Shown here: positions 3,863 through 45,101 of the stretch, in pieces
How positions within the stretch are numbered: the first letter of the stretch is position 1
Layout of the letters: each line of letters begins with the position of its first letter
DNA from: Oikopleura dioica
Taxonomy: Eukaryota; Animalia; Chordata
DNA length: 64,000 bases
Reading direction: 5' to 3'
Assembly (NCBI GenBank): GCA_907165135.1
Contig: OU015567.1
Coordinates: 62,001-126,000 of the forward strand
Notes under the pieces: model-generated
Told to the model about the DNA's origin: nothing
The model's database searches: none
The model's input: the letters and a program-made list of their open reading frames with translations, nothing else
Translations under genes and position numbers: made by a program

Positions 3863-3897
3863 ATGGAACTGAAAGCCCTGGTCAGGCACCAGTTCCA
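3850..3897 (+). promoter_or_regulatory. -1 ribosomal frameshift signal (A AAA AAC plus downstream stem)
   Basis: Heptamer 3850-3856 is in X XXY YYZ phase with gag and pol is in the -1 frame. Stem TGGAACTG (3864-3871)/CAGTTCCA (3890-3897). Confidence 0.8.
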
Positions 3898-6800
3898 AGG
3901 ACTTGTTCAATTTTTCGCATTGGATTACAATATTTTGTAGAAATGACAGTTTTTTCAAAAAAAATAAAAATGCTCGTCGATTCTGGCTCCCAACTTAACC
4001 TTTTGCCCAAATCATTTATTCCCGATAATGTTAAAATTCAAGCCCCTGATATTTTTGCTAAAAATTACGGTGGAGGAAGTATTGAAATTCTTGGTTTTGT
4101 CGAATGTGATTTTCATGTTAAAACGGAAAAATGGGGTAAATCGCGATTTTATATTGTAAATGACAATTGTCAGGCAATTCTCGGTTCGGAAGCACTTAAA
4201 TCTAATGAAATTATGATCAATCTTCATCGAAATCGTCTAGTTAAATCTGGTCCTATAGAGCGAATGGCGAATTTATGTAATAATGCATCAAAAAGCCCAA
4301 CAGTTAATAACATTGAGCAAGACAGTTTTTATGCCGTTTCTGAGCAAACTTACACATTTCGAGGCAAAAGTGAGCAAATTATCGATTTAAAAATTCCTCA
4401 TTTGAACAGATCAATGAATCTTTTTTTAGAAGAAAGCCAGCTTAAAAATTCGAAGCTAGAGTTAATAGAATCATTCCAGAGAGTTGATCCCGAGAATCCA
4501 TTCTTTCGTATTCTTGTTATAAATCCCCTGAATTCTACAGTTAAAATTCCTGCTGGCACGGCCTTTGCAAAACTAGCGGAAATAGCTGAGATCGCCCAAA
4601 TCAAGCCCTCAAAAAAAGATCTTAATTTTCTTCTTTCGCGGTTAAAAATAGGCAATATATCGAAAAAGAATAAGCCGGTACTTTTTGGTCTTCTTGCTAT
4701 ATACACCCATTTATTTCAAGACGAGGACGACAATTTGCCTGTTTCGAACCTTGAAAAATTTTCGATTGAACTAGAGACTGATCGCCCGATTTGTAGCAAT
4801 ATGTACAGAACGCCATATGCCTTGCGGGGAATAATGACCGGTACTACTACCTCCTACCTTGGGCAAGACATGATAATGCGAATTAATTCACCCTATAATA
4901 GCCCCGCGTTACTCGTAAGGAAAAAGAATGGTACATTCAGATTATGTATTGATTACAGGAAATTAAATTCGTTTACGCTCCAGCAGCATCATCCGTTGCA
5001 ACAAATTGAAGACGTTTTAGGGTATTTAGAAAATAGCATTATTTTTTCTTGTGTTGATTTGCGAAAAGGATTTCATCAGTGCCTCGTAGATGAGAAATCG
5101 CGAGAAAAACTAGCTTTTTCGACTGAAGACGGACAATTTACTTGGAAAAGGCTTCCAATGGGTCTCAAAAATGCCCCTATTCATTTCGCAAAATGCATGG
5201 ATGTTATTTTACGAGACACGCCGAAAACTCAAATTTGCGCTTATCTTGACGATTTAGTGGTCCATTCAAGAACGGAAGAAGAACATTTAGCCAATTTACG
5301 TAAATTATTTCAAATTTTAGACCAAAATAATTTACGGATTAACATCGACAAAGCGAGTTTTTTTGAGCGAAAAGCATGCATTTTGGGTTTTGAAATTTTT
5401 GAAGGGAGAATACGGCCATCACAGGACAAGATCGAAGCGGTTAAAAATCTGTCTATTCCGAGAAACCGTGAGGAGGCACAATCACTTTTCGGACTTCTTT
5501 CGCAGCACAGAAAATTTATTAAAAATTTTGCACCCCTTGGAGTAGAAATTTCAAAAACGTACAGAGGGTCATTTTGTTGGACAAAAGAGGCGACGATTTC
5601 ACTCGAAAAGCTCAAAAGTATCATCTGCCATAACGCTCTTGAGCTCAAAATCCCCCCACTAAATGACGGTGTTTTCGTACTCGAGACAGACGCATCTAAT
5701 CATAGTTTTGGTGGAGTTCTTTATCTTTGCGCGGAGCGAAATAAAAATCACCATCATTCTCATAATTGCCTACAACCGATAGCTTACCACTCGCTTAATT
5801 TTACGCCGGCACAACAGAAATACGGGACATTGGAAAAAGAACTTTATAGTGGGAAGACATGTATGGAACGATGGAGGGCTTATCTTGCTTATGTCGATTT
5901 TCTTTGGATTACTGATAACTCTTGTGTTAAATACGCTCAATCCTTCAAGACAAATAATTTAAAAATTCAAAGATGGTTTACGGAGCTTCAGGGCTTTTCA
6001 TTTCGAATTGAACAGAGGAAAACTCATCAAATGAAAATAAGTGATTGCCTTAGTCGTAATACATTAAATTGTTCGATCAATCAAATAAAATTTACCCCTG
6101 AATCATTCGTAGAGTTTCAAAAATCTGACCCAGTATTATCACAAGTTAGACGTTTCGTTAGTATTGATAGATGGCCAAATAACCCACCAAGCGAGCTTTA
6201 CCCATTCTTTTTACGTAGACCTGACCTTGAAATCCTTGGGTCTGGTGAGCTAGCTATAAATTCTCCAGCCTATCAAAAAAAGATTTTGCGTCCCCGAGGC
6301 ATTGACAGAGACAATTTGCAGCGAATATCATGATCACTCTCATTTCGGAGTCGATATTACAACCGAAAAAATTTCTAGAAAGTATTTTTGGCCGGGATTA
6401 AAAAATACAGTCGCGAGCTTTATAAAATCATGTCACAAATGTCAAATTTCAAAACCAAATCTACAGCCTAACAAACCTCCTTTAGGCAAATCTGAAACAC
6501 CTAGCGGCCCTTTTGAAATTTTGTACTTTGATTTAATTGGCCCACTTCAAGAAACTGATTTTGGTCATAAATATATAATGGTGGTTATTGACGGTTTTAG
6601 CAAAAAAGTTTACGCGGAGCCCCTATCGTGCAAAAAATCGGATTATTTACTGCAAAAATTCCGGAGCGTATTATTTAGAAATCCAAAATTTCCAAAATAT
6701 ATGGTTTTAGATAACGCGAAGGAACACGTTCTGATTGAAAAATTTTTGAAAGAAAATAAAATTGGTGTACATTATATTCCCCCGCGTCATCCCCAGTCTA

Positions 6801-8319
6801 ACGGGCAAGTTGAAAACGTCAATAGAACCATAAAAGCCAGGCTCAGGGCTCGTTCAAATTGGGTGAATTGGGATATTTTTCTGTTTGAAATTGTTCACGA
6901 AATAAACAGTAGTTTACACACAGTACTCGGAACAACCCCATTTTGTGTAGAAACTGGTATAAAAAGCAGTCATCATTTTCAAGACCCTTATTGGCGAACA
7001 TACGGAGATAAAATCGACGTAGACTTTGAGAAAATTCGTGCGAAAATTGAACAAGAAAAGCAAAAAAGAATGACCAAATTTGAAAATCCCCGTTTCAAAG
7101 AATACAATTTAGGCGATAAAGTTCTTATTAAAAATTTCCGCGAAAAATTTCCTCCGTTTTTAGGTCCTTATGAAGTGACGTTTAAATCCCCGAGTGGTCT
7201 GTGGTACGCTGTTAAAAATGATAAGGACGAATTTAGGCGACATGCGGAACATATGAAAAGTTATTCTCAGCGAAATTCAATTTTAGAGACGAATAATGAT
7301 GTTGAAAAATACTCCAAGATTGTGACAAAGCCACAAGAGAACGATCTCGAGTTTTTTGAATTTTTTTCCGAAAACTGTCTTTTTTCGAAGGATTCCCTCG
7401 GCCGGTTTGCTGAAAATTCCCCCACAGAAAAAGAATCGGAAAAAGCGCATGAACCTTTCTCCTCCGAAAGGTCAGATCAGTCTTTACAATCGGAACCTTA
7501 TCGGGAGCGGTCTAGTTCTTCTTCAGAACCAGAAAATTTTTCATCCTCATCGACTCTTTTGATAGAAATGCCAGTACCGAATATAAATGGTAATCAAGAA
7601 CGTGATTTGAATCAAGTAGGAAATGGATCAGACATTGTGCTTGATTCCGAGAAATCAAGTTCTGATTCTGAGCTCTCTGTTAATTTGACATCGTACGATA
7701 AATTGCCCGAAATTGATCCGCTAGTTGCTTTAAAACGTAGAAGGGAAAGATCTGATGATTCCGTTGTCGAGCGTAAAATTGCTAAATTCACAGTTGAAAA
7801 TAATTTGGAAAACATGTCAATTTTAATTAAAATGGAAAATCATGATCTTGACTTTTTCGAACATCTTAATGATAAATGGAAAAATACAGACGACATAGAG
7901 GAGACCTATGTTGAAAATGGTATATTTATCAAACTGAACGAATTAACAAGAGACTCTCTTTTATTCATTCTTTTTAAAATGAATCAGGAATTTGATCTTG
8001 AGGAATCAAGGGCAAAACTTCAGATAAAAGTGAAGGAAACTATTCGTAGAGAATATCCGAATTGGCGTAAATCGAGAAACGGACAACTCCTTTTTTTTTT
8101 GCGGTCTTTAGAGTGCAAAAAGAGCGAACGTTGTACGAACTAACTGTCCCCGAGCTAAAAACTGTATGCGCATTTTATGATTTACCCTGTAAATTTCGAA
8201 ACTGCTCAAAAACAATTTTACAGGCATCTATCGAAACAGAACTGCTTAAAAAATTTCCAAATCATCCAATGCGTAAAAATGTTCTTGTTTTTCTTCCGGA
8301 CTTTGAAACTGAAATATAA
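3850..8319 (+). CDS. pol: Pol of A1: protease, RT, RNase H, integrase and long C-terminal extension (ORF pieces 3943-6333, 6302-8143, 8113-8319)
   Basis: Protease LVDSGS; RT LCIDYRKLN and YLDD; RNase H VLETDAS; IN HHCC zinc finger, D,D,E core and GPY motif. The two breaks lie in A7 and T-run homopolymers and are open in copy A2. Confidence 0.95.
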
Positions 8320-8369
8320 AAAAAGATGGGCGATAAAGATGCTCGTTTGGGACCCATGGAAGGTCACAG

Positions 8370-10578: not shown

Positions 10579-12116
10579 ATTTATGATAACGATGACCATC
10601 GTAAAAAAATTTTTTTTTTGAATTTTTTTTTCTGTTGGGTTTGAGAGGCTCAGAATCAACCAAAATGACGCTCGGAAGACGGCAGAAACGCTGCAAATAA
10701 AATTAGGGCAAAAAACGAAATTTCAAAATTTTGACCTCGTTTTTGGGCGATTCATGATAACGATGACCATCGAAAAAAAAATTTTTTGAATTTTTTTTCT
10801 GTTGGGTTTGAGAGGCTCATAATCAACCAAAATGTTGCTCGGAAGACGGCAAAAACGCTGCAAATAAAATAAGGGCAAAAAACGAACTTTCAAAATTTTG
10901 ACCTCGTTTTTGGGCGATTCATGATAATGATGACCATCGAAAAAATTTTTTTTTTTGAATTTTTTTTCTGTTGGGTTTGAGAGGCTCAGAATCGACCAAA
11001 ATGACGCTCGGGAGATGACAGGAACGCTGCAAATAAAATAAGAGCAAAAAACGAATTTTCAAAATTTTGACCTCATTTTTGGGCGATTCATGATAACGAT
11101 GACCATCGAAAAAAATTTTTTTGAATTTTTTCTGTTGGGTTTGAGAGGCTCAGAATCAACCAAAATGACGCTCGGAATACGGCAGAAACGCTGCAAATAA
11201 AATTAGACCAAATTACGAAATTTCAAAATTTTGACCTCGTTTTTGGGCGATTTATGATAACGATGACCATCGAAAAAAAATTTTTTGAATTTTTTCTGTT
11301 GGGTTTGAGAGGCTCAGAATCAACCAAAATGACGCTCGGAAGACGGCAGAAACGCTGCAAATAATATTAGGGCAAAAAACGAAATCTTAAAATTTTGACC
11401 TCGTTTTTGGGCGATTTATGATAACGATGACCACCGAAAAAAAAATTTTTTTTTTTTGAATTTTTTTCTAATGGGTTTGAGAGGCTCAGAATCAACCAAA
11501 ATGACGCTCGGAAGACGACAGAAACGCTGCAAATAAAATTAGAGCAAAAAACGAATTTTCAAAATTTTGACCTCATTTTTGGGCGATTCATGATAACGAT
11601 GACCATCGAAAATAAAATTTTTTTTTTTGATTTTTTTTCTGTTGGGTTTGAGAGGCTCAGAATCAACCAAAATGACGCTCGGAAGACGGCAAAAACGCTG
11701 CAAATAAAATAGGGGCAAAAAACGAATTTTCAAAATTTTGACCTCGTTTTTGGGCGATTCATTATAACGATGACCATCGAAAAAAAAATTTTTTTTTTGA
11801 ATTTTTTTTCTGTTGGGTTTGAGAGGCTCAGAATCAACCAAAATGACGCTCGGAAGACGGCAGAAACGCTGCAAATAAAATAAGGGCAAAAAACAAACTT
11901 TCAAAATTTTGACCTCATTTTTGGGCGATTCATGATAACGATGAACATCGAAAAAAAAATTTTTTTTTTTAATTTTTTTTCTGTTGGGTTTGAGAGGCTT
12001 AGAATCAACCAAAATGACGCTCGGAAGACGGCAGAAACGCTGCAAATAAAATTAGGGCAAAAAACGAACTTTCAAAATTTTGACCTCGTTTTTTGGCGAT
12101 TCATGATAACGATGAC
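10579..12116 (+). repeat. ~165-bp satellite, block 2
   Basis: Same monomer, resumes in phase after TSD ATTTA. Confidence 0.98.
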
Positions 12117-13249: not shown

Positions 13250-16200
13250 TTAAAATTTTGGTCCAAAAATAAGCTCGTTGTTTTTTCTTGGATGATTTGG
13301 ATACAGTTGTTCAAAGAAAATTTTAACAAATTCGATCATTTCAGTTTTGTTTTGAATAGCAGTTTTTGGAAGTTTGTATTCAGAAATCAGGACCTTTAAT
13401 TCGGGTTTTGTCAAATCGTAAAGAGTTTTCTCCTTTTTCAAGTTTAGAACTGAAAAAAACAAAAACTCTCCAGATTCGCTTTTTCGCCAATTAGGGTGAT
13501 TCTTTCGGATATACTCTCTTATTTTAATTCTTAATTCACCTACAGATTCCGTTGTAGTATAAAAGACCTCAAACTTATACAAAATATACCTAAGGGCTTC
13601 TCTCGTTAGCTCTCCTAGTTTCAAAATACACCCTTTCTCAATGTCCTCATCCTCCCTAATTCGTTCTTCAATATTTTTGAAAAATCAATATCCTTATTCT
13701 CAAATTTAAAAGCGATAGAAAGATTAAAATTTTGCTCACATATCATTTCTGAACAATCACTGGCTTCAGAATAAGAATTTTCCATATCTAAAATTTCTAA
13801 ATTTGGAATTTTTGAAGAGGGATTCGAATCTTTTGATGATTTTCTTTCTCTTTTTCGATCATTTTGTAGGCCTTCACCCTCGTTTGGATGACTTAATTCA
13901 AGTTCTCCCTCCCGATTAGCCGTTATGTCCAATTTGTCATATGAAATTAGATGTTCCGAATTATTATCAATCTGATTATGAACCGTTTCTGTCTCAATTT
14001 CAGAATCAAGTGTGACTTCCCAATGAGAATGCTCTTCTATTTCCCATTCAGAATCACAAATCGAATTCGATTCTCGTGGCAAAAAATCGTCAGGTTTTGG
14101 GATCTCATCCATAATTGACGAATTTATAGTTCCATTTACGGTTATATTTTGGTTCTCTATAATTGAAACAATAGAGTCTTCTTCGTCAGAAGAGTCAATT
14201 GATTCTAGTGTTTCAATTATAAAATCTGTAAATATATTTTCAAAAATTCCTTCGACAGAAAGAGAGACGAGCTTTTCGTACGCATTCTCCAGCAACTTTT
14301 CCTCGGAAGATAAACTTACTGGGGAATACGAACAATTTGAAAAATTTTCATGGAATCCTGAAGAATAGCTTTCGGACGTTTCTGTATCATATTGAGCGTC
14401 GGGGGAAAAACTCGGAATGCCCGAGCTTACTGTAATTTCCTTCCTATCATTATATTTTTTGAGATGATCGGCGTGTCTCCGATATTCTTTTTCCCCAGAT
14501 CTGACCGTGTACCACGTCCCCTCTGTGGAGCTACTAGTAACTTCATATGGGCCTAAAAAAGCTGGTTTTTTAGCGTGAAAATTTTTAATGAGAACTTGAT
14601 CACCGACCTTATATTTAACAAATTTAGGATTAGAAAATTTTTCAAGCCTGATTTGCTTCTCTTCGTCCAATAATTTCTTGATCGATTCAAAATTAATTTG
14701 TTCTCGTTCATGGTAAATCCTGTAATTTGGGTCAAAAATATCATGAGGGTGCTTAAATCCAAATTGAAGCGAGAATGGAGATGTTTTAGTGACCGAATGC
14801 TGTGAAGTATTTAAATCATGGACAATTTCTTGCAAAAATAAATCCCAGTTTTTATAATCACATTTAGCTCGCAGTCTACTTTTTAGGGTTCTATTAAAAT
14901 TTTCAACTTGACCATTTGTTGATGGATGTCTCGGTGGTGTAAAATGGGGCTCAATCGAATTTTCTTTCATAAATTTTTCCATTTCAGAATGCTCTCGAGC
15001 ATTATCTAGAATAACCTTTTTTGGGAAATAAGGATTTTTGAAAATAATGCTCTTAAATTTTCCAAGAAGATATTTTGAATCTCGAGATTTAAGCGGTTCA
15101 CAATAGCCAAATTTAGAGAAAAAATCAATCATAACTAAAACATATTTATTTCCAAAATCAGTTGGAGGAAGCGTGATAAGGTCAAATCCAAAAACTTCGA
15201 AGGGTCCGTCTGGAGTTTTAAATGATAATATTATTGGGATGAAAATAAGGCTTATCTTTCTGGCAAAACGGGCAAGTTTTTATAAATTCTTTTATACCAT
15301 TACGCATTCGCGGCCAAATATATTTCATTGAAATTTTTGCAAAAACTTGGTCGATTCCTGCGTGGCAATAGTCATGATAATTTTTTATTATTTCATTTTC
15401 GATATCCTTCGGCACGAGAACGCGACGATTATAAAATTCGTCAATGTAGGCTATTTCTCCACTTTCCAAAAAGGTCAATTTATCTCTCAAAAACGAATAA
15501 AAATTTATGTCCCCTTTGGGATTATTTGGCCATCTATCAATTTGCACGTATTTTCGAATTTCACTAAGTGTTGGGTCTAATTTTTGGATTTCACAAAATT
15601 TTTCTTGGGAAATTTGAATCGAATTAAGACTGACCTTATGTGAATTATTTCTACTCAAACAATCGCTAATTTTCATTTTTGATGAAGATTTTTGAATAGT
15701 TCGAAAGCAGAATCCCTGAATTTCAGTAATCCATCTAGCAATTTTTTGATTATTTGTCCTAAGCGATCTTATATATTTTATATTCGAATTGTCTGTTATC
15801 CAGTCGAATTCCGTATAAGAGAAATAAACAGCCCATTTTGTCATACAAGTTTTTGCAGAGTATAATTCCTTTTCGATAATTGTGTACTTTGACTGTGTTT
15901 CATTAAAATTTCCACTATTATAACCAACAGGGACCAAACAATCTGTAGAATGATGATGATTCTCGTCCCGACATTTTTGATCACAAATATACAGTGCTCC
16001 GCCGTAGCCAAGAGAGGATGCATCTGTTTCTAAAACAAAAACGCCTTGATCGGCTGGGGGAATTCTCAACTTCATTGCATTATTGCAAATTATTTCTTTG
16101 AGTTGTAAAAATGCTTGGGTGGCCTCATTCGTCCAGCAGAACGAATTTCTATATGTTTTTGTTATCGGTAATGCAATTGCCGCAAAATTTTTAATAAATC

Positions 16201-19959: not shown

Positions 19960-20293
19960 ATGACCATCGAAAAAAAAATTTTTTGAATTTTTTCTGTTGG
20001 GTTTGAGAGGCTCAGAATCAACCAAAATGACGCTCGGAAGACGGCAGAAACGCTGCAAATAAAATAAGGGCAAAAACGAAATTTCAAAATTTTGACCTCG
20101 TTTTTGGGCGATTCATGATAACGATGACCATCGAAAAAATTTTTTGAATTTTTTCTGTTGGGTTTGAGAGGCTAAGAATCAACCAAAATGACGCTCGGAA
20201 GACGACAGAAACGCTGCAAATAAAATAAGAGCAAAAAACGAATTTTCAAAATTTTGACCTCATTTTTGGGCGATTCATGATAACGATGACCAT
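19960..20293 (+). repeat. ~165-bp satellite, block 3 (2 monomers)
   Basis: Same monomer, between TSD ATGAC and TSD ACCAT. Confidence 0.97.
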
Positions 20294-24000: not shown

Positions 24001-26380
24001 TGAAGAGCAATCGAAGTTAGAATTGCGTAAAGATTCATTTTCGGATTTAGAATCATCAATAACCGAATCGAGCTCCGATAGTTTAGACATTGAGGAATTC
24101 AAAAATTCTCTCGTTTTAAGGGATTACGAAAATTTAATTAATTTAAATATAATTGATATTTTTAAAGAGGCTTATCTCGAGGTTAAGGGAATCCGACAAA
24201 CTGATCAGGCCAATATTCAAAATGTAAGGGAAATCAGCGGGAAAGATGACATTTTCGACGAGACCTCAACGGAGGACCTGGAGATAGTAGCGGGTTCATC
24301 GGCAATATTACCTTGTAGAAATCAAACGGTTCGTCAGATTGAATTTTCGGGCGACTTAACATCATATGACAAACTTGATATAAGTGCTAATAGAAATGCA
24401 AAACGCGCGAGGGGAAGCTCTGGAGAATTGTCTGACATTCAAGATTTTAAAAGGCCCTTTTTTCACCCAAAAACAACAGATAAAACAGTACAAACTCGAC
24501 AACAAATCGATAGAACAATTTTAATGGACTCGGAAATAACGAACAGCTCCGTTCGATTACCAAAAACAAGAACAAACGAATTAATGAATGAAGCAGAAAT
24601 GCTTGATTTTGAAGGTTGCCAGATTGGAATAATTTTGGAAAACAAAAATGAAAATTTTTTTAACGAAGTTAGGCAGGGGTTGCATGATTTTAAAAAGAAT
24701 AAGAAAATCGGTAATGGGTTTATTCTGAAAATGTCTGAACTGCCGAAAGAAACATTGATATCGATCCTCGCTGATTTTGGCGAAACGCATTCTGCTTCAG
24801 ATAACAAATCCGAATTAGGTAATAAAGTGAAATTTTGGATTATCAAGAATCACAATAATTGGCAAAAATCAAGCTCGGGAGAGTTGCTTTTTCTAGCTAT
24901 TTTGCAAATAAAAAGAGAAACAACTCTTCCGCAGTTTTCTTTATACGAGCTCAAGTGTCTTTGCTCTTTTTATTCTCTTGAAAAAATTCCAAACTCATTT
25001 ATTAACAAAAAATCAAACATTCGTGAATTTATTATCGCTCAGTTTTCCTCTTTCTTTCCAAATCATCCGACAAAAAACGGTGAACTTGTTTTTTATCCGG
25101 ACACTTGAGCTCGTTCTAGGGCTTCAAATATTCGAAGGCAAAAGATGCTCATTTAAGACCCTGGCGTGGCCATGGTGATACCTTCCGAATAAATAACAAA
25201 AATCAAAAAAAAAAAAATACAAAAAAAAATGAATAAAAAATGTTGCTCAAATATAAAAGCCCATAGTGCATGTTAATCAAAGAAAAAATCAATAAGAGCC
25301 ATATTGATTTTCCCTTGGGCCCTTAACTAAGTGGGTAAAGTTTTTTGCTAATTTAATCAAAGGAAAATTAAGGGTTCAAGGGCTTTTACAAAATAATTAC
25401 TGGTTAGGGATTTTAGTTCGCATATTCTGCACGTACGCGTGTATCACATCAATTTATTATTGCATGAAAAGGATGATCGTTAAAACGTTAAAAATCACAT
25501 ATATCTATGCCTTTATTTACAGTGTTGATTGTAAATAAAAGTATAAGAAATTCTTAGGAAAATTTTATCTGAAAAAATATTTGTTTCTGTCATAAAAATC
25601 AACGAACCGCTGGGGAACGACTGCTGCTTTTCTTCCTTGATTTCGACGACGTTGGGACCTATCATCCTTACATGCTTCGCTTCCACGAAAGTGGCTGTTC
25701 GCAAAGTAGCCTGGAGCAGAATATCTCAATATGGCCAACCGCGAACATAAGCGCGACATGGTAATCAAAACTGTCGAGCCCGTTACGGCTGCTTTTTTAG
25801 TTTTTCTGACCAAAAAACAAAGATGGCAACTACACAACGAGCCGATGGCAGAGACAACGACGACTTCTACTTCTACAACACTTTGGACAACGATAAAAAC
25901 GCTTGGAACGACTACGATTTGCTTAACGGCTTTGGAAACCCAGAAATACTTTCACAATCGGTGGGTCACATAGTGAGAAAGCCGGTTTTGAGAGTGATTT
26001 CAAGAAAATGCGCCAGCTGTGGCAAAGAAAAATACAGAAAAAAATGAAATTTGAAAAAGACGAAAATTATGTAACCACAATCATTGGGGTTACATAACGA
26101 AGATTATGAAAATTATATAATGGCTATTTTGCCTTTGGATAAATTGAAAATGAAAAATTTCATCAGAAAGTTACATAATGCGAAAGACAATTGACGTAAA
26201 TGGCGCCATGACTTCTTAACAATGGAAATCCAGCGCAAACCGGTTGGCAAAAACTTGACCTTCTCCATTTTCAAAAATTGATCCTCATTCTTGATCTTTC
26301 AATAAATCACCAACAGCAAATAAATTTTTTAGTATTTTATAGCAAGAATCGTTTTGAGAAAATAAGCAGGAATCGTATCA
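21082..26380 (+). mobile_element. Internally deleted Ty3/gypsy element D, nested in LTR E
   Basis: 3' LTR 25176-26380 is complete. 5' LTR 21082-~22222 lacks its last ~56 bp and is fused to RNase H. TSD ATCAC at 21077-21081 and 26381-26385. Confidence 0.93.
22223..25108 (+). pseudogene. pol: Truncated pol of D (RNase H, integrase, C-terminal extension)
   Basis: VVECDAS RNase H; HEGGH...CKYC zinc finger; FDMIG/DNA/GSVENFN core; FIGPY. Gag, PR and RT are absent. Confidence 0.9.
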
Positions 26381-26640: not shown

Positions 26641-28989
26641 ACCATCGAAAAAAAAATTTTTTTTTTGATTTTTTTTCTGTTGGGTTTGAGAGGCTCAGAA
26701 TCAACCAAAATGACGCTCGGAAGACGGCAGAAACGCTGCAAATAAAATAAGGGCAAAAAACAAACTTTCAAAATTTTGACCTCGTTTTTGGGCAATTCAT
26801 GATAACAATGACCATCGAAAAAAATTTTTTGAATTTTTTTCTGTTGGGTTTGAGAGGCTCAGAATCAACCAAAATGACGCTCGGAAGACGGCAAAAACGC
26901 TGCAAATAAAATAAGGGCAAAAACAAACTTTCAAAATTTTGACCTCGTTTTTGGGCGATTCATGATAACAATGACCATCGAAAAAAATTTTTTGAATTTT
27001 TTCTGTTGGGTTTGAGAGGCTCAGAATCAACCAAAATGACGCTCGGAAGACGGCAAAAACGCTGCAAATAAAATAAGGGCAAAAAACGAACTTTCAAAAT
27101 TTTGACCTCGTTTTTGGGCGATTCATGATAACAATGACCATCGAAAAAAATTTTTTGAATTTTTTTCTGTTGGGTTTGAGAGGCTCAGAATCAACCAAAA
27201 TGACGCTCGGAAGACGGCAGAAACGCTGCAAATAAAATAAGGGCAAAAACAAACTTTCAAAATTTTGACCTCATTTTTGGGCGATTCATGATAACGATGA
27301 ACATCGAAAAAAATTTTTTGAATTTTTTCTGTTGGGTTTGAGAAGCTCAGAATCAACCAAAATGACGCTCGGAAGACGGCAGAAACGCTGCAAATAAAAT
27401 AAGGGCAAAAACGAACTTTCAAAATTTTGACCTCGTTTTTGGGCGATTCATGATAACGATGACCATCGAAAAAAATTTTTTGAATTTTTTCTGTTGGGTT
27501 TGAGAGGCTAAGAATCAATCAAAATGACGCTCGGAAGACGGCAAAAACGCTGCAAATAAAATAAGGGCAAAAACAAACTTTCAAAATTTTGACCTCGTTT
27601 TTGGGCGATTCATGATAACAATGACCATCGAAAAAAATTTTTTGAATTTTTTCTGTTGGGTTTGAGAGGCTCAGAATCAACCAAAATGACGCTCGGAAGA
27701 CGGCAAAAACGCTGCAAATAAAATAAGGGCAAAAAACAAACTTTCAAAATTTTGACCTCGTTTTTGGGCGATTCATGATAACAATGACCATCGAAAAAAA
27801 ATTTTTTTTTTGAATTTTTTCTGTTGGGTTTGAGAGGCTCAGAATCAACCAAAATGACGCTCGGAAGACGGCAAAAACGCTGCAAATAAAATAAGGGCAA
27901 AAAACGAACTTTCAAAATTTTGACCTCGTTTTTGGGCGATTCATGATAACAATGACCATCGAAAAAATTTTTTGAATTTTTTCTGTTGGGTTTGAGAGGC
28001 TCAGAATCAACCAAAATGACGCTCGGAAGACGGCAGAAACGCTGCAAATAAAATAAGGGCAAAAACAAACTTTCAAAATTTTGACCTCATTTTTGGGCGA
28101 TTCATGATAACGATGAACATCGAAAAAAAAATTTTTTTTTTGAATTTTTTTTCTGTTGGGTTTGAGAAGCTCAGAATCAACCAAAATGACGCTCGGAAGA
28201 CGGCAGAAACGCTGCAAATAAAATAAGGGCAAAAAACGAACTTTCAAAATTTTGACCTCGTTTTTGGGCGATTCATGATAACGATGACCATCGAAAAAAA
28301 AAATTTTTTTTTGAATTTTTTTTCTGTTGGGTTTGAGAGGCTAAGAATCAATCAAAATGACGCTCGGAAGACGGCAAAAACGCTGCAAATAAAATAAGGG
28401 CAAAAAACAAACTTTCAAAATTTTGACCTCGTTTTTGGGCGATTCATGATAACAATGACCATCGAAAAAATTTTTTGAATTTTTTCTGTTGGGTTTGAGA
28501 GGCTCAGAATCAACCAAAATGACGCTCGGAAGACGGCAAAAACGCTGCAAATAAAATAAGGGCAAAAAACGAACTTTCAAAATTTTGACCTCGTTTTTGG
28601 GCGATTCATGATAACAATGACCATCGAAAAAAATTTTTTGAATTTTTTCTGTTGGGTTTGAGAGGCTCAGAATCAACCAAAATGACGCTCGGAAGACGGC
28701 AAAAACGCTGCAAATAAAATAAGGGCAAAAACGAACTTTCAAAATTTTGACCTCGTTTTTGGGCGATTCATGATAACAATGACCATCGAAAAAAATTTTT
28801 TGAATTTTTTCTGTTGGGTTTGAGAGACTCAGAATCAACCAAAATGACGCTCGGAAGACGGCAGAAACGCTGCAAATAAAATAAGGGCAAAAAACAAACT
28901 TTCAAAATTTTGACCTCATTTTTGGGCGATTCATGATAACGATGAACATCGAAAAATTTTTTTGAATTTTTTCTGTTGGGTTTGAGAAG
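26641..28989 (+). repeat. ~165-bp satellite, block 4 (with ~820-bp 5-mer higher-order repeat)
   Basis: Variant GATGAACATCG at ~27296, 28112, 28941. Confidence 0.97.
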
Positions 28990-31498
28990 TGATATCCTTC
29001 GGGAACAACGCCTCAAGCAACACAAAAATTTATTTCACGGCCAAATATTTACGTCAATTCGGTTCTACGTTAGTTTAAATTTGTCTTGTCAGCTTGGTAT
29101 CACCAAATTGATCAGACATTTTTCCAAAAATCATTTCACGATATTCTTCTCAAAATGAAAAGATGGTCAGTTTTTACGAGCCAGATTGACCCAAAATTGT
29201 GTTATCATCATGTCATCTCTTTACGATTTCTACTTTTATCATTGGAATGCTCATATGCTCTCATCATAGTCAACGGGTCGGAAATTAATTAAGGGTTTAT
29301 TCAGTCTAGGATTAATGTGTATGTACGCATACTTTGGAAAAAATCTTAATTTGTTTCTGACTATTCTAGTGCGATCTGACGTCCATTCATCAAAAATATG
29401 CAATTCGCAAAACCGCATGTTTAATCTATTTATTGATATTTCTTATCATTGCTTTGCGATTTTAAAAGTTCGATTATTGACAGTTCATACGATTCAACTT
29501 CTACAACAAGATAGCCGTCAACACCTTCTTCAACAACAACTACTCCAACGAGCCGATAAACCGTCGTATCATCTCGGTGCCGTGGGGTCGGACAAACTCT
29601 ATGTCAGGGCGTCCGCTTGTCGCAAATTAGCTCATCCGTAAGAGAAGATACGGTGCGAACCGCGACAGTAACTTCCCCCGGGTATGTTCCTTGGAATTTG
29701 CTTCTTCTATGATTTCAATTTTGATAAATTTATTTTATAAAATCCTGACCAAATTTTATTCAATTTATTTGTTAAAATTTTGTACATATTCTTTTTCTTT
29801 TCTCATCCTTTTATATTTTTCAATCCTAATTAACAGTCACTTCTACGGTCACATAGTGAGAAGTTTTAGTGGCTGTTATTATTTTCTGCTTTTTATTATC
29901 AAAAAAAATTAATTTGCGTTTTATCTCGTCACGCGCGGCGCCGGCTTCAAAATCCTTTGAAAATAACTTGCTTGGCAAGTTCGACCAGCTCATCATCCGA
30001 AAAGAAATCGATCCGAAAGGATTTCCCGCAAGAAAAACCGCTAAAGAAAGCCACGGGCTCTCTTCCTTGTTTTCAAAAGAAAAATTGTTTTTCAAAAACA
30101 ACCGCTTGTTCAAAAACACTGATCAAATCTCGCTGCTATTTAACCCCGCGTCGCGCCTTTTTCAGTCATTCAAATCACAAATAAAACCACGCAAATTTAA
30201 AATTTGATTCTCGTTATTTTGGCTTGGCATTCTAGAGTTAGAGATCGAGCAAAATTCTTGCAGGACAGCCGCTTCCGTATCAAGCTAGTTTGCGACAAGC
30301 GGACGCACTGACAGAGAGTTTGTCCGACCCCACGGCACCGAGATGATACGACGGTTTATCGGCTCGTTGGAGTAGTTGTTGTTGAAGAAGATGTTGACGA
30401 CTTCCTTGTTGTAGAAGTTGAATCGTATGCACTGTCAATAATCGAACTTTAAAAATCGCAAAGCAATGATAAAAAATATCGATAAATAGATTAAACATGC
30501 AGTTTTGCAAATAGCATATTTTTGGATGAATTGACATCAGATTGCACTAGAAAAGTATTATGATGAGAGCATATGAGCATTCCAATGATAGAACGTATAG
30601 ATCGTAAGGAGATGACATGATGATAAGACAATTTTGGGTCAATCTGGCTCGTTAAAACTGACCATCTTTTCATTTTAAGTAGAATATCGTGAAATGATTT
30701 TTGCAAATATGTCTGATCAATTTGGTGATACCAAGCTGACAAGACAAATTTAAACTAACGTAGAACCGAATTGGCGTAAATATTTCGCCGTGAAATAAAA
30801 ATTTTTTATTTGGCTTGAGGCGTTGTTCCCTAAGGATATCATAGCTCATCCGTAAGAGAAGATACGGTGCGAACCGCGACAGTAACTTCCCCCGGGTATG
30901 TTCCTTGGAATTTGCTTCTTCTATGATTTCAATTTTGATAAATTTATTTTATAAAATCCTGACCAAATTTTATTCAATTTATTTGTTAAAATTTTGTACA
31001 TATTCTTTTTCTTTTCTCATCCTTTTATATTTTTCAATCCTAATTAACAGTCACTTCTACGGTCACATAGTGAGAAGTTTTAGTGGCTGTTATTATTTTC
31101 TGCTTTTTATTATCAAAAAAAAAATTAATTTGCGTTTTATCTCGTCACGCGCGGCGCCGGCTTCAAAATCCTTTGAAAATAACTTGCTTGGCAAGTTCGA
31201 CCAGCTCATCATCCGAAAAGAAATCGATCCGAAAGGATTTCCCGCAAGAAAAACCGCTAAAGAAAGCCACGGGCTCTTTTCCTTGTTTTCAAAAGAAAAA
31301 TTGTTTTTCAAAAACAACCGCTTGTTCAAAAACACTGATTGAATCTCGCTGCTATTTAACCCCGCGTCGCGCCTTTTTCCGGCATTCAAATCACAAATAA
31401 AACCACGCAAATTTTAAATTTGATTCTCGTTATTTTCGCTTGGCATTCTAGAGTTAGAGATCGAGCAAAATTCCTGCAGGACAGCCGCTTCCGTATCA
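28990..31498. mobile_element. Composite of two family-A solo LTRs: full LTR(+) 28990-30282, inverted 5' half 30283-30841, 3' half(+) 30842-31498
   Basis: Outer TSD AGAAG at 28985-28989 and 31499-31503. Inner duplication AGCTA (30283-30287)/TAGCT (30842-30846). Confidence 0.92.
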
Positions 31499-33860: not shown

Positions 33861-36800
33861 TTAGATATTTGGTCCGAATATGAGATCATTGTTCTTTTTT
33901 GGATGATTCGGATATAATTTTTCAAAAGCAGAATTAATAAATAAAATCATTTCTGACTTATTTTGCAAAACACATTTTGGCAGGTTATACTCAGCAATAA
34001 GAACTTTCAATTCAGGTTTTTTCAAATCATAAAGAGTTTTTTCCTTTTTCAAATTTAAAATTGAAAAGAAAAGTAACTCTCCGCATGCATTTTTTCGCCA
34101 ATTAGGGTGATTTTTCCAAATATACTCTCTTATTTTTATTCTTAGATCTGATATCGTTTCCGTTGTCAAATATTGAACATCAAACTTATGCAAGATAAAT
34201 CTAAGTGCTTCTTTTGTTAATTCACCCAACTTCAAAATACACCCATTTTCAATTGCCATATTCTCTTCAAGCTCCTCAATTCTCGATTCTATTCTCTGGA
34301 AAAAACTTTCATGCTCGTTTTCTAATTTAAATGTTATTGAAGTATCGAAGTTTTCACAAATCATTTCCGACATATCATTTGACTCTTCATCAGAGCTATC
34401 TTTTGGGTCTAAATTTGGTATTTTAGAGCAAGGAATGGAGTCTTTCGATGATTCTCTTTCGCGTTTCCGATTTGCCGAAATATCTAATTTATCGTAAGAA
34501 ATAAGGGGTTCTTGATCTTCCGTTATTATATTTTCATGGACTGTTTCTGTTTCAACCGTAGATAATTCTTCGTCTACCGTCACTTCCCAATGAGAATTTT
34601 CCTCAATTTCCCACTCCGAATCAGATGAAATAAGGGACCCAGAGACCGGAAAATCGTCAGGTTTAGGTATCGCTTCAATATTTTGCGAACTATCGGGCTC
34701 TCTTAAACTCTGTTCATTCTCGATTATTGATACACAAGAACTTTCCTCAGAGGAAGATTCCATAGATTCAATTGTATCAACAATCAAGTCTGAAAAAATA
34801 TTCTCAAAAACAATATCAATTAATGAATTAACTATGTTGTCTATTTTTTCTTCTATTTCATCTTCCTTCATTGAAATAGGTGGACAAGAATAAAAACCAC
34901 TTGAAAAACTTTCTCGCTCGAAAACATTGTCTTTGTGGAAGGTCGAAAAATCGTCTTGAATATCTGGAAGTTCAACTGAGAGACCTAAATCTTCCGAATC
35001 CTCTTTTCGCGCGTTAAATTTTTTCAAATGATCAGCGTGTCGCCGAAACTCTTTATCATCAGACGCGACTGTATACCAAGTTCCCTCTTTCGATTTATTT
35101 TTTATTTTATACGGCCCAAGAAAAGCTGGTTTTTTCGCGTCGAAATTTTTGATAAGAACCATGTCGCCGATTTGATAAGGCACAAATTTTGGGTTTGAAA
35201 ATTTCTCAAGCCTATTTTGTTTTTCATCTTCGATCAATTTTTTAATTTGTTGAAAATCAATATCACTTTTTTCGAAAGAAGCCCTAAAATTTGGATCAAA
35301 AATGTCATGAGCGTTTTTCACGCCCATTTGAAGGGAATAAGGGGATGTTTTCGTGACTGAATGCTCGCTTGAATTAAGGTCATGGACAACCTCTTGAAGG
35401 TTCTGATCCCAATTTACTAACCCACAACGTGCACGTAATCTACTTTTAAGGGTTCGATTATAATTTTCCACTTGCCCATTAGAAGAAGGATGCCTTGGAG
35501 GAGTAAAATGAGGGTCTATATGATTTTCTTTCATAAATTTCTCGATCTCTGAATGTTCCCTAGCATTGTCGAGCACAACAATTTTTGGATAAATTGGATT
35601 TTTGAAAATCACACTTTTAAATTTTTCAAGGAGATATTTAGAATTACGAGATTTAAGAGGTTCACAATATCCGAATTTCGAGAAAAAATCGATCATTACC
35701 ATTACATATTTATTTCCATGATCAGTTGGAGGTAACGTGATCAGATCGAATCCAAAAACTTCAAAAGGTCCGTTTGGTGTTTTGAAGGTCAAAACCGGCG
35801 CTTTATTGGGGTGAAAATCAGGCTTATCTTTTTGACAATACGAACATGTTCTAACAAATTCTCTTATTGCTTGACGCATTCTAGGCCATATATACTTGAC
35901 GGATATTTTTGAAAAAACTTGATCGATTCCAGCGTGGCAATATTCATGGTAATTTTTAATAAGTTCACTCTCTAAACTTTTTGGAACTAAAATTCGTCTA
36001 TTTCCTGAATCATCGAAAAAAATAATTTGATCATTTTCCGAAATAGTCAAATTTTCTCTCAAAAGCCAATAAAATGTTATATCACCTGATGGATTGTGAG
36101 GCCATCTATCTATCGTCAAAAATTTTCTTATCTTGGTTAAAAGAGGATCAAGCATCTGAAGCTCGCAAAATTGTTTTTGAGTTATTTTAATTGAATTTAT
36201 AAGGGGCTGATTTTGAATCGTAGTTTGTCTACTCAAACAGTCACTTATCTGCATTTTTGACGAGGGTTTTTGAATTGTTCTAAAATTAAATCCTTGAATT
36301 TCCGTTATCCATCTCGTGATTTTTTGATTATAGGTTCTTAGTGTTCGAACGTATTTAATGTTTGAATTATCTGTAATCCAATCAAAACTATTGTAAGAAA
36401 GATAGATTGACCACTTCATCATGCATTGTTTGGCGGAAAATAATTCTTTTTCTTTAATTGTGTATCGTGATTGAGTTTCGTTAAAATTACCACTGTTATA
36501 GCCTACAGGGATCAAACACTCACTAGAATGGTGATGAGAATTATCCCTACAATTTTTTTCACAAATATAGAGTACCCCACCGTATGCATTATTTGACGCG
36601 TCTGTCTCTAAAACGAAAAGCGCATTGTCTACTGGGGGTATTTTGAGCTTCATTGCATTATCGCATATAATATTTTGAAGCTTGCTTAACGCGCTCGAAG
36701 CCTCGTCTGTCCATTTAAACCCGTTTCTCCAAGTTTTTGTAATTGGTAATGCTATTGCCGAAAAATTTTTTTATAAATCTACGATGAAAGTTTAAAAGTC

Positions 36801-42338: not shown

Positions 42339-43475
42339 TGATACCAAATTCAATAAACTAGAATCCTTGCAAAAGAAACGAAAATAAAAATAGCTGTTGG
42401 TGGTTTTATTGATAATCGAGAATGATTTTTGAAATTTGAAATTTTGAAAAGTTTCTTTTCAGAAACCGGTTGGTTCCGGATTTTTCTATTGTTTTCGTAA
42501 ATCGGGCCATTTCGGCCATTGTGGCTTCTTACGTAACGCGTTATTTGCAAACTTTCATCATCTTTTTACGTAACGTCAATTCTTAGATAATTATATAACA
42601 TGTTACGATTTCTTTTGAGAATTCTTATTTTTAATAAATTCGCCATAAGTGGCGCTTTTTGACGAAATTTGTAATCAAACAGCTTTCTCACTATGTGACC
42701 CACTGTTTAACTACAGATTCCGACAAAGTTCCAGGGCAGTAGTCGTTGTTGTTGTCAGTAGTCCGTTGTCAGTCCAGGCAGGGGTTTCGTTGTCGTTGTG
42801 GTAGTAGTCGAAGTTGTCGTTGTCGTCCTAGTCGGGTCGGCGTGTAACTGCGGCGTTGAAAGTGGTCAGTTTTCTAGAAAATGCAGTAACCGAGTCCTCG
42901 GCGAGTTCGATTACCTGGGAGCGCTTATAACGCTTTTTACCGGTTTTGGATATTCTGCCCGCGGTAACTTAGCGTTTAGCCCTTTCGGGAAGCTCAGCCA
43001 GTAAGAATTATTTATTCCAACGGCGTTGAGAAGAATCATCGTCCAGTAAATGTAAAATATTTTGAAAAGATTGAATTTTTGAAAAAGCAGAAATATAAAT
43101 TAAAGAAATTATTGTGAGATAAATTCATGCGTTTTAACTTTGAACCTAAAAGAAGTTATTAAGAAAAACCTTTTGAATCAAAGATATCAAAAGGGTGGCT
43201 AATGTGCCTCAGAACATGTGAATACACGCGTACGTGCGGAAAATATAGTAATCAGAATTTCCTAGCGTTCTCATGCTAGAAATTACCCTCAGTCTAATCA
43301 GCAAACCTATTTTTTTTTTCATTTTTTCCGGTTTGGCTAAATTTTTTTTGATTTTTGACGAGGTCCGATCAAACCTGACCAGTTATTTATTGTTAATTTG
43401 TGAGATCATGCTTTTATCTTTGGCCGTGATTTAGCGCTTCAGTAATAATATTTTTTTTTTTCACAGTAGGTATCA
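42339..43475 (-). mobile_element. Solo LTR F (1137 bp)
   Basis: TGATA...TATCA termini. Shares LTR motifs (ACGTACGCGT, GGCACATTAGCCACC, GGTCACATAGTGAGAAAG) on the minus strand. TSD CGATG/CTATG has one mismatch. Confidence 0.88.
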
Positions 43476-43811
43476 CTATGACCATCGAAAAAAATTTTTT
43501 TTTTTTTTGAATTTTTTTTCTGTTGGGTTTAAGAGGCTCAGAATCAACCAAAATGACGCTCGGAAGACGACAAAAACGCTGCAAATAAAATAAGAGCAAA
43601 AAACGAATTTTCAAAATTTTGACCTCATTTTTGGGCGATTCATGATAACGATGACCATCGAAAAAAAAATTTTTTTTGAATTTTTTTTCTGTTGGGTTTG
43701 AGAGGCTCAGAATCAACCAAAATGACGCTCGGAAGACAGCAGAAACGCTGCAAATAAAATTAGGGCAAAAAACGAACTTTCAAAATTTTGACCTCACTTT
43801 TTGGCGATTCA
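43476..43811 (+). repeat. ~165-bp satellite, block 7 (2 monomers)
   Basis: Same monomer. Confidence 0.97.
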
Positions 43812-45101
43812 TGATATCCTTAGGGAACAACGCCTCAAGCAACACAAAAAATTTATTTCACGGCCAAGTATTTACGTCAATTCGGTTCTACGTTGGTTTA
43901 AATTTGTCTTGTCAGCTTGGTATCACCAAATTGATCAGACATTTTTTCAAAAATCATTTCACGATATTCTTCTCAAAATGAAAAGATGGTCAGTTTTTAC
44001 GAGCCAGATTGACCCAAAATTGTCTTATCATCATGTCATCTCTTTACGATTTCTATTTTTATCATTGGAATGCTCATATGCTCTCATCATAATCAACGGG
44101 TCGGAAACTAATTAAGGGTTTATTCAGTCTAGGATTAATGTGTATGTACGCATACTTTGGAAGAAATCTTAATTCGTTTCTGACTATTCTAGTGCGATCT
44201 GACGTCAATTCATCAAAAATATGCAATTCGCAAAACCGCATGTTTAATCTATTTATTGATATTTCTTATCATTGCTTTGCGATTTTAAAGTTCGATTATT
44301 GACAGTACATACGATTCAAAGTCTACAACAGAACAGCCGTCAACACCTTCTTCAACAACAACAACTCCAACGAGCAGATAAACCGTCGTATCATCTCGGT
44401 GCCGTGGGGTCGGACAAACTCTCTGTCAGTGCGTCCGCTTGTCGCAAACTAGCTCATCCGTAAGAGAAGATACGGTGCGAACCGCGACAGTAACTTCCCC
44501 GGGTATGTTCCTTGGAATTTGCTTCTTCTATGATTTCAATTTTGATAAATTTATTTTATAAAATCCTGACCAAATTTTATTCAATTTATTTGTTAAAATT
44601 TTGTATATATTCTTTTACTTTTCTCATCCTTTATTTATTTCAATCATAATTAACAGTCACTTCTACGGTCACATAGTGAGAAGTTTAAGTGGCTGTTATT
44701 ATTTTCTGCTTTTATTATGAAAAAATAATTAATTTGCGTTTTATCTCGTCACGCGCGGCGCCGGCTCCCGAAACCTTTGAAAATAACTTGCTTGGCAAGT
44801 TCGACCAGCTCCTCTTCCGAAAAGAAATCGATCCGAAAGGATTTCCCGCAAGAAAAACCGCTAAAAGAAGCTACGGGCTCTCTTCCTTGTTTTCGAAAGA
44901 AAAATTGTTTTTCAAAAACAACCGCTTGTTCAAAAACACTGATCGAATCTCGCTGCTATTTAACCCCGCGTCGCGCCTTTTTCCGTCATTCAAATCACAA
45001 ATAAAACCACGCAAATTTTAAATTTGATTCTCGTTGTTTTGGCTTGGCATTCTAGAGTTAGAGATCGAGCAAAATTCTTGCAGGACAGCCGCTTCCGTAT
45101 C

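What the first reader, a model, noticed from the sequence alone, without database searches (positions are those of the whole stretch)
7800..8319. Integrase tail ends in two tandem SAP/HeH-like repeats instead of a chromodomain: candidate targeting module
Seen in A1, A2 (~50140-50654), B (13250-13760), C (33861-34370) and D (~24600-25108). After GPY and a divergent acidic/Ser-rich linker comes a conserved ~170-aa region with two related repeats. Repeat 1: KLxELT(R/K)xxLxxILxK...LxxK(V/I)..xI..x(Y/H)PNWRKS..G(E/Q)xLF. Repeat 2: E(R/K)TLY(E/D)LTxPELKx(V/L)xxxYxLP...Kxx(L/M)xxxI...(F/Y)PNHPx(K/R)N..LxF. Known: the LxxLTVxELKxxL..xGL...GxKxxLIxRL spacing is that of SAP/LEM/Rho-N helix-extension-helix nucleic-acid-binding folds, and SAP domains bind AT-rich DNA. 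Inference: this module tethers integration to the A/T-tract satellite.
Basis: partly seen in the sequence, partly recalled or inferred. Interest (0 to 1): 0.86.

Follow-up and report, generated by a model that had tools for sequence, protein, structure and literature searches.

The report
Tandem SAP-like tail on retrotransposon integrase
A small group of jumping genes in this animal genome ends its cut-and-paste enzyme with a duplicated, DNA-gripper-shaped tail that I found described in no paper, and the copies here land almost always on one short spot of a repeated DNA unit, so the tail is a strong but unproven candidate for steering where they land.

Summary
Five Ty3/gypsy-type copies of four families (A1, A2, B, C, D) end Pol with GPY, an acidic Ser-rich linker, then a conserved ~160-aa region holding two related ~57-aa repeats. 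In A1 itself the two repeats lie in different frames.

- **Duplication:** a 39-sequence profile comparison of repeat 1 with repeat 2 gives probability 99%, E 1e-18.
- **Sequence:** the signal points to SAP (Ku70 SAP E 4e-5; Pfam SAP best 23.0 bits against a 23.9 cut-off).
- **Selection:** the module is as constrained as the integrase core, and its two repeats are basic.
- **Distribution:** only 50 of 1.84 billion representative proteins carry it, placed at the C-end wherever the ORF is long enough to judge.
- **Insertion sites:** six of seven independent satellite insertions fall in one 21-bp stretch (TSD starts within 17 bp) beside the A/T tract (P about 4e-4).

That the tail causes this targeting, and that its ligand is the A/T tract, is inference. 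I rate it a new variant of a known kind, the integrase-borne targeting domain. The scan had already noted both this module and the hotspot on other DNA of this genome.

The parts
6302..8143 (+). A1: ORF with the integrase zinc finger, catalytic core, GPY motif, acidic linker and repeat 1
   Evidence: Translation. Pfam assignments on the homologous C copy.
7685..7705 (+). A1: conserved L[TI]SYDKL motif followed by a basic KRRRER stretch (NLS-like), upstream of the module
   Evidence: Also present in metagenomic relatives.
7826..7858 (+). A1: conserved pre-module motif [IF]K[LMF]EN...FF
   Evidence: Low model confidence in model 1.
7919..8098 (+). A1: repeat 1 (helix-extension-helix unit with flanking strands, ends YPNWRK..GQLLFF)
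8089..8100 (+). A1: T homopolymer where the reading frame changes between repeat 1 and repeat 2
   Evidence: DNA alignment of A1 with A2.
8119..8319 (+). A1: repeat 2 (in another frame than repeat 1) plus the stop codon
50163..50654 (+). A2: intact pre-motif, repeat 1, repeat 2 and stop
13253..13660 (-). B: intact repeats 1 and 2, with a frame break just upstream
33861..34331 (-). C: intact pre-motif, repeat 1, repeat 2 and stop, at the end of a 930-aa open ORF. This is the sequence that was modelled.
24629..25108 (+). D: intact pre-motif, repeat 1, repeat 2 and stop, in an internally rearranged element
43809..43813 (+). Satellite target ATTCA of A2. The other copy of this TSD follows the 3' LTR end at about 51995. 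The outer inverted A LTR (about 1244-10578) uses the same monomer position (ATTTA).
12112..12116 (+). Satellite target ATGAC of B (repeated at 19962-19966). C uses the same position (32765-32769 and 40525-40529).
20289..20293 (+). Satellite target ACCAT of D (repeated at 26661-26665)
42339..43500 (-). Solo LTR (family E) inserted in the same hotspot, with TSD CGATG/CTATG
28988..31498 (+). Family A LTR complex inserted at a different monomer position (TSD AGAAG). This is the one outlier.

Best explanation
The last ~160 residues of Pol in this Ty3/gypsy clade form an accessory domain fused to the integrase through a long acidic linker. Its core is an ancient internal duplication of a ~57-residue unit. 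Each unit is a SAP-type helix-extension-helix motif framed by short beta strands and closed by a P-N-[HW]-[PR]-K ... G-x-L-x-F motif.

Most likely it is a nucleic-acid or chromatin tether. It would hold the intasome on the ~165-bp satellite, so that strand transfer happens in a ~20-bp stretch just upstream of the monomer's A/T tract, each family at its own sub-site. This would keep insertions out of genes in a very compact genome.

- **Shown:** the domain, its duplication, its fold class, its conservation under purifying selection, its restriction to one clade, and the clustering of insertions.
- **Inferred:** that the domain binds DNA, what it binds, and that it causes the clustering.
For: - **Duplication:** hhalign of repeat 1 against repeat 2 gives probability 99.1%, E 1.2e-18.
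- **Sequence:** profile against PDB sequences hits the Ku70 SAP domain at E 4e-5. Pfam SAP matches 8 of 39 members, SAP_new25 7 of 39, Rho_N 3 of 39.
- **Selection:** the B-C module is 75% identical with dN 0.15, like the IN core (74%), against 51% for the linker. A1-A2 dN/dS is 0.04 for repeat 1, 0.11 for the core and 0.31 for the linker.
- **Charge:** the two repeats have a median pI of 9.3. A Lys before helix 2 of repeat 2 is basic in 95% of members. The linker has pI 4.1-4.6.
- **Position:** in every hit long enough to judge, the module sits at the C-end of Pol, and only 50 of 1.84e9 representatives have it. More distant gypsy Pols lack it.
- **Targeting:** seven independent satellite insertions with clean 5-bp TSDs. 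Six have TSD starts within 17 bp of one another, a 21-bp footprint (ATTCA twice, CGATG, ATGAC twice, ACCAT). The simulated chance is 3.8e-4.
- **Earlier scan notes** report the same hotspot on other pieces of the genome. These are leads that I did not test.
Against: - There is no direct evidence of DNA binding or of a causal link.
- HeH domains also bind proteins (LEM binds BAF; MANF and CDNF C-terminal domains bind BiP) or RNA (Rho_N).
- Family A is not strict. One LTR sits at AGAAG elsewhere in the monomer, and A1 sits in another LTR at CTTGT.
- A distant module-bearing element (L005) is flanked by ordinary AT-rich, non-satellite DNA.
- Seven events in one window is a small sample, and the 17-bp span was chosen after seeing the data.
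- No RNA reads were found in three oligo-dT runs, though it was not shown that this lineage is in those runs.
Confidence: 0.55

Rival explanations
1. The module is a protein-interaction domain, not a DNA binder. Like a LEM domain binding BAF, or like other integrase tails binding host factors, it would dock the intasome on a host protein that itself marks the satellite. Alternatively it would recruit a factor that blocks autointegration.
Against: At sequence level the signal is SAP, SAP_new25 and Rho_N, and no LEM family appears among the 25 most frequent. The repeats are basic with conserved Lys/Arg. Base-pair-level, family-specific sub-sites fit DNA reading somewhat better, though Ty3 shows that a protein tether can be as precise (background knowledge).
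Confidence: 0.2
2. The tail serves another step of replication, such as binding of cDNA ends or genomic RNA, intasome assembly or nuclear import. On this view the satellite clustering comes from something else: the integrase core's preference for the local inverted repeat and for DNA next to a rigid A/T tract or nucleosome linker, together with loss of insertions that land in genes of a compact genome.
For: - The hotspot contains an inverted repeat, CGATG-AC-CATCG. The B and C sites (minus orientation, ATGAC) and the D site (plus orientation, ACCAT) are mirror images on it (my reading).
- LTR ends of all families begin TGATA, and the hotspot contains TGATAA.
- The monomer length of ~165 bp is about one nucleosome repeat (the link to nucleosomes is inference).
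- An NLS-like basic stretch lies upstream of the module.
- Rho_N, an RNA-binding HeH domain, is among the hits.
- L005 is not in a satellite.
Against: Selection against genic insertions cannot give base-pair precision within a monomer. Several families at offset sub-sites point to a shared landmark read at different distances. An accessory domain at the integrase C-terminus is the classical place for targeting functions (background knowledge).
Confidence: 0.2
3. The region is non-functional decayed sequence, or an artefact of reading ORFs in repeats.
For: A1 and B carry frame breaks near the module. No RNA reads were found.
Against: Three copies are open. dN/dS is 0.04-0.11. The module is conserved down to about 22% identity in 50 clusters from independent metagenomes. 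The fold prediction is confident.
Confidence: 0.02

Closest known systems
SAP domain (PF02037; Ku70, SAF-A, PIAS, Tho1, Hcc-1)
   Different: It stays below Pfam's cut-off. The inter-helix loop is 2-6 residues longer and lacks the usual Gly. Each unit adds flanking beta strands and a P-N-[HW]-[PR]-K...G-x-L-x-F closure. It occurs as a fixed tandem pair fused to an integrase. DNA binding is untested.
LEM / LEM-like and bacterial Rho_N helix-extension-helix domains
   Different: No LEM family appears among the 25 most frequent Pfam families. Partner specificity (BAF, RNA) is unknown here.
Chromodomain of chromoviruses (Ty3/gypsy integrase C-terminus)
   Same: It occupies the same position, as an accessory domain after the GPY/F region of a Ty3/gypsy integrase. 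By analogy it is expected to tether integration to a particular chromatin type (background knowledge).
   Different: The fold is unrelated and Pfam finds no chromodomain. Insertions here show base-pair-level clustering in one satellite monomer rather than regional heterochromatin preference.
Integrase-borne targeting determinants of Ty1, Ty3, Ty5, Tf1 and plant centromeric CRM elements
   Same: The targeting function would lie in the C-terminal part of the integrase, with insertion into gene-poor 'safe' DNA (background knowledge; PMC7459421 and PMC5911963 for Ty1 and Pol III targeting).
   Different: Those are short peptide motifs or chromodomain derivatives that bind host proteins. This is a folded tandem HeH domain of ~125 residues with possible direct DNA contact.
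SAP domains in other mobile elements (a Chlamys Penelope-like element of Physarum; Zisupton DNA transposons)
   Same: A SAP-type putative DNA-binding domain recruited as an accessory domain by a transposable element (PMC8557442).
   Different: The element classes and the position in the protein differ (inside the RT, or in a transposase). Those are single SAP domains. No site specificity is reported in the passage I read.
Tor elements (Ty3/gypsy of Oikopleura dioica)
   Same: If the host is O. dioica, as earlier scan notes say, these are Ty3/gypsy elements of that genome. A distant module-bearing relative has a third ORF after pol, in the position of env in Tor3/4.
   Different: No Tor reference sequence was available to test membership. 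The Tor paper I read (PMC4402516) mentions neither an integrase tail domain nor satellite insertion.

Membership tests
Ty3/gypsy (Metaviridae) LTR retrotransposon | Pol order RT, RNase H, integrase, with an H2C2 zinc finger, an rve core and a GPY/F motif | tested here: met
   Pfam RT_RNaseH, Integrase_H2C2 and rve on the C ORF. RVT_1 is found in relatives. The GPY motif is seen in the translations.
Ty3/gypsy (Metaviridae) LTR retrotransposon | Long terminal repeats with TG...CA ends and a short target-site duplication | tested here: met
   LTR pairs. Ends are TGATA...TATCA with 5-bp TSDs at every junction.
Chromovirus | Chromodomain (PF00385) at the integrase C-terminus | tested here: not met
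   No chromodomain hit down to E = 1. The tail folds as tandem HeH.
SAP domain (PF02037) | Score at or above Pfam's gathering cut-off (23.9 bits) | tested here: not met
   Window copies give E 0.086 (A2) or no hit. The best relative scores 23.0 bits and the next 20.4. SAP matches 8 of 39 members at E <= 1.
SAP domain (PF02037) | Two amphipathic helices joined by an extended loop (helix-extension-helix fold) | tested here: met
   AF2 model with pLDDT 92. SAP domains of Hcc-1, SF3B2, E1B-AP5, Tho1, PIAS1, MKL1, SLX4 and FAN1 are among the matches.
SAP domain (PF02037) | Binding to DNA, preferentially AT-rich or S/MAR | not testable with these tools
   Only indirect evidence: basic pI and conserved Lys/Arg.
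LEM domain | Sequence match to LEM and binding to BAF | tested here: inconclusive
Tor elements of Oikopleura dioica | Clustering of Pol with the Tor1-4 reference sequences | not testable with these tools
   No named Oikopleura Pol appeared in the searches. The host identity rests on earlier scan notes.
Site-specific (satellite-targeted) LTR retrotransposon | Independent insertions at the same position of the target repeat, beyond chance | tested here: met
   Six of seven TSD starts fall within 17 bp of a ~165-bp monomer, simulated P 3.8e-4. The sample is small and the span was chosen after the fact.

The most novel reading that the evidence does not exclude
The tandem HeH module is itself a sequence-reading DNA-binding domain. 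It would recognise a landmark in the monomer (the CGATG-AC-CATCG inverted repeat, the TGATAA, or the A/T tract) and set the intasome at a fixed, family-specific distance. That would make it a self-contained, DNA-sequence-directed targeting domain built into an LTR-retrotransposon integrase of a chordate, rather than one relying on a host tethering protein.
Probability: 0.3. Interest if true: 0.85.

Novelty: new variant of a known kind. Interest (0 to 1): 0.66.

Why it matters
Where retroelements integrate decides how much harm they do to the host, and it is the key property for any integrating vector. The known integrase-borne targeting devices are few: chromodomains, and short peptides that bind host factors.

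A folded, duplicated SAP-type domain at the integrase C-terminus, found with near base-pair-precise insertion into one satellite monomer, would add a new class. It would also give a simple testable system of one small domain and one 165-bp DNA. It would further explain how LTR elements persist in an extremely compact animal genome, by landing in satellite arrays rather than in genes.

Tried and rejected
- **BLASTP of repeat 1 against repeat 2 in one copy** found nothing. Profiles were needed.
- **Metagenome scan with a 20-nt satellite anchor**, meant to sample junctions without bias, found only a chance match in an unrelated, apparently bacterial contig. The search of fetched loci for the hotspot sequence was also empty.
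- **Metagenomic contigs of relatives** mostly end inside the element or run element-LTR-element, so they give no flanks. Only L005 gave a flank, and it is non-satellite.
- **RNA evidence:** three oligo-dT runs gave 0, 1 and 0 reads on 4.7 kb of element C. This is uninformative without proof that the same lineage is in those runs.
- **Rfam and tRNA scans of the window** were empty, so there is no sign that the satellite is a Pol III gene array.
- **Search for a named Oikopleura/Tor Pol** found none, so Tor membership stays untested.
- **Literature searches** found no description of a SAP/HeH domain in an LTR-element integrase, nor of satellite-targeted Tor elements. The library is incomplete, so this is not proof of novelty.
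- **PNWRKY in antisense LTR frames.** I considered whether it meant anything. I treat it as a chance reading of a conserved LTR DNA block and did not pursue it.

Full report
**What is there**

The window (36% G+C) is a ~165-bp satellite array, all in one orientation. It is interrupted by LTR retrotransposons. Pfam on the best-preserved Pol fragment (element C, 930-aa open ORF) finds RT-RNase H, the H2C2 integrase zinc finger and the rve core, and no chromodomain. LTR pairs are plain. Rfam and tRNA scans are empty.

Earlier notes of this scan name the host as the tunicate Oikopleura dioica. I did not test that. Because these are retrovirus-like elements of an animal, I only compared and described copies.

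**The observation**

Translations show the same layout in five copies of four families. After GPY comes an acidic, Ser-rich linker of 176-240 residues (pI 4.1-4.6). A conserved L[TI]SYDKL motif with a basic stretch lies in its last part, about 45-60 residues before the [IF]K[LMF]EN...FF motif. Two repeats then run to the stop codon.

| Copy | Window coordinates |
|---|---|
| A1 | 7826-8319 |
| A2 | 50163-50654 |
| B | 13253-13660 (-) |
| C | 33861-34331 (-) |
| D | 24629-25108 |

In A1, the copy in the finding's coordinates, repeat 1 and repeat 2 are in different frames. The change lies in a T homopolymer at about 8089-8100, where A1 and A2 differ in length. This may be decay or a homopolymer assembly error. 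B has a break just upstream of its module. A2, C and D are open.

**Are the two repeats related?**

BLASTP on one copy says no. Profile comparison says yes. With 4 sequences E is 4.5e-4. With 39 sequences the probability is 99.1% and E is 1.2e-18 over 56 of ~58 columns.

In distant relatives repeat 1 ends HPNHP[RK]...G.L.F, just like repeat 2, which makes the duplication obvious.

**How widespread is it?**

An exhaustive HMMER search of 1.84 billion representative proteins found 50 proteins at E <= 0.001. In every hit long enough to judge, the module sits at the C-end of a Pol (hits of up to 1,641 aa); the rest are short fragments. Of the ten clusters I looked up, all sources are marine-type metagenome collections (ENA, JGI, Logan) plus one NCBI assembly, and none carries an informative name.

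Ty3/gypsy Pols that are 30-35% identical in RT lack the module. The two nearest RT relatives are cut off inside the linker, so they are uninformative. A distant member has a third ORF after pol (no Pfam hit). That is where env sits in the Tor3/4 elements of Oikopleura (PMC4402516).

**Fold**

With four sequences AF2 already gave pLDDT above 82 for the two repeats. With 39 sequences it gave pLDDT 92.1 and pTM 0.79. Each repeat is strand, short turn, helix (10 residues), loop of 10, helix (15 residues), strand.

- Foldseek finds nothing significant for the whole module.
- Its highest-probability rows are SAP-like: the 3'hExo SAP domain, MANF and CDNF C-terminal domains, and the emerin LEM domain.
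- The ESM Atlas gives a SAP cluster first, then HeH/LEM and Rho_N clusters.

**Sequence signal**

The family profile hits the Ku70 C-terminal SAP domain (1jjr) at E 4e-5 on repeat 2. Among the 39 members scanned one by one, SAP (8 members), SAP_new25 (7) and Rho_N (3) are the commonest Pfam families. In distant members the SAP hit lies on repeat 1 and covers the whole SAP profile, at 23.0 bits against the 23.9 cut-off.

So the module is SAP-like, and in my judgement homologous, but it is not a member by Pfam's own criterion. It also has extra features: flanking strands, the P-N-[HW]-[PR]-K...G-x-L-x-F closure, and a longer loop.

**Is it functional for the element?**

| Comparison | IN core | Linker | Module |
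|---|---|---|---|
| B vs C, amino-acid identity | 74% | 51% | 75% |
| B vs C, dN | 0.19 | 0.41 | 0.15 |
| A1 vs A2, dN/dS | 0.11 | 0.31 | 0.04 (repeat 1) |

The two repeats are basic (median pI 9.3). The Lys before helix 2 of repeat 2 is basic in 95% of members, and the Lys/Arg of the PNWRK motif in 92%.

**Is integration targeted?**

I read every junction in the window. All have clean 5-bp duplications. On the monomer stretch GCG-ATTCATGATAACGATGACCAT-CGAAAAAAATTTTT the sites are as follows.

| Insertion | Orientation | TSD |
|---|---|---|
| A2 | + | ATTCA |
| Outer A solo LTR, which A1 later split | - | ATTTA, same position as A2 |
| Solo LTR E | - | CGATG/CTATG |
| B | - | ATGAC |
| C | - | ATGAC |
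| D | + | ACCAT |
| Family A LTR complex (28988-31498) | + | AGAAG, about 60 bp away in the monomer |

These are independent events, because the families or orientations differ. Six of seven TSD starts within 17 bp of a 165-bp unit has a simulated probability of 3.8e-4. The span was chosen after seeing the data.

A1 itself is nested in an A LTR with TSD CTTGT, so family A is not strict.

Three things I noticed in the hotspot:

- It contains the inverted repeat CGATG-AC-CATCG. The B and C sites (minus orientation) and the D site (plus orientation) are mirror images on it, that is, the same position in each element's own frame.
- It contains TGATAA, which resembles the TGATA that begins every LTR here and in a distant metagenomic relative.
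- It ends 2-3 bp before the A/T tract.

Earlier notes of the scan report the same hotspot on other pieces of the genome. I list them as agreeing leads, not as evidence.

**What I could not get**

- An unbiased sample of junctions from metagenomes failed.
- Contigs of relatives give almost no flanks. The one flank obtained, L005, is ordinary AT-rich DNA and not a satellite.
- RNA reads were absent in three runs, but that was not a valid test.
- DNA contigs of another run show that family C is multi-copy with variants.

**Interpretation**

Its functional reading is the best available hypothesis. An accessory, basic, strongly constrained, SAP-type tandem domain sits at the very position where integrases carry targeting functions. 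It occurs in a clade whose copies land on one spot of a satellite.

The link remains an inference. The ligand could be the A/T tract, the inverted repeat, the TGATAA, or a host protein. HeH domains also bind proteins (LEM binds BAF; MANF-C binds BiP) and RNA (Rho_N). I put 0.55 on the tether reading, 0.2 on a protein-mediated tether, 0.2 on another replication role with clustering caused by integrase-core or chromatin preference, and about 0.02 on no function.

**Novelty**

Five literature searches returned results and three papers were read. None described a SAP/HeH domain in an LTR-retrotransposon integrase. SAP domains are reported in a Chlamys Penelope-like element and in Zisupton transposons (PMC8557442). 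The O. dioica assembly paper says only that subtelomeric regions tend to hold retrotransposons or long-period tandem repeats (PMC8008620).

I rate it a new variant of a known kind, the integrase-borne targeting domain. Within this scan it is not new: the same module and hotspot were noted, and partly followed up, on other DNA of the same genome.

Noticed in passing
window 8089-8100 (A1) against 50426-50435 (A2): A1's frame change between the two repeats lies in a T homopolymer whose length differs between A1 and A2. In a long-read assembly this could be a sequencing artefact rather than decay.
   Followed up: partly
window 7685-7760; 24356-24376; 34485-34505 (-); 13930-13950 (-): A conserved L[TI]SYDKL motif followed by a basic KR-rich stretch lies in the otherwise divergent acidic linker, about 45-60 residues before the pre-module motif. 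It is also kept in metagenomic relatives, so it may be an NLS or a short host-binding motif.
   Followed up: no
satellite monomer, e.g. window 52010-52021: The insertion hotspot holds an inverted repeat, CGATG-AC-CATCG. The B and C sites (minus orientation, TSD ATGAC) and the D site (plus orientation, TSD ACCAT) sit at mirror positions on it, which is the same position in each element's own frame.
   Followed up: partly
window 1244-1546 and 9578-10578: An inverted family A solo LTR is split by the full-length A1 element (5-bp TSD CTTGT). This is an LTR-into-LTR nesting of the same family.
   Followed up: partly
all LTR ends in the window; L005 503 and 7854: Every LTR family here, and a distant metagenomic relative, begins TGATA(C/T)C and ends with the complement (G/A)TATCA. 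The satellite hotspot contains the similar TGATAACG.
   Followed up: no
window 56655-57343: The last satellite block ends inside the same hotspot (…ATTCATGATAA|G) and abuts a 57-bp G+C-rich tandem repeat of 12 copies. The nature of the sequence from 56657 to 64000 was not determined; it holds no ORF of 200 aa or more.
   Followed up: no
window 20294-26660 (element D): D has matching 5-bp TSDs, but its internal repeats are only about 4.1 kb apart and the ORF starts inside the integrase. It is a rearranged or deleted element that still keeps an open integrase tail.
   Followed up: partly
L006 6401-7816: A distant module-bearing element has a third ORF of at least 472 aa after pol, running to the contig end, with no Pfam assignment. 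This is the position of env in the Tor3/4 elements.
   Followed up: partly
L002 and L003: Contigs of relatives run gag-pol, LTR, gag-pol. These are either tandem elements sharing an LTR or an assembler walking through the LTR.
   Followed up: no
window 1607-1621 (-), 8431-8445 (-), 30766 (+), 33719 (+), 40446 (+): A conserved LTR DNA block about 70-140 bp from the LTR start (containing GGCCGTGA-like sequence in all families) happens to read PNWRKY in an antisense frame. That is the same peptide as the repeat 1 motif, and I take it as coincidence.
   Followed up: no
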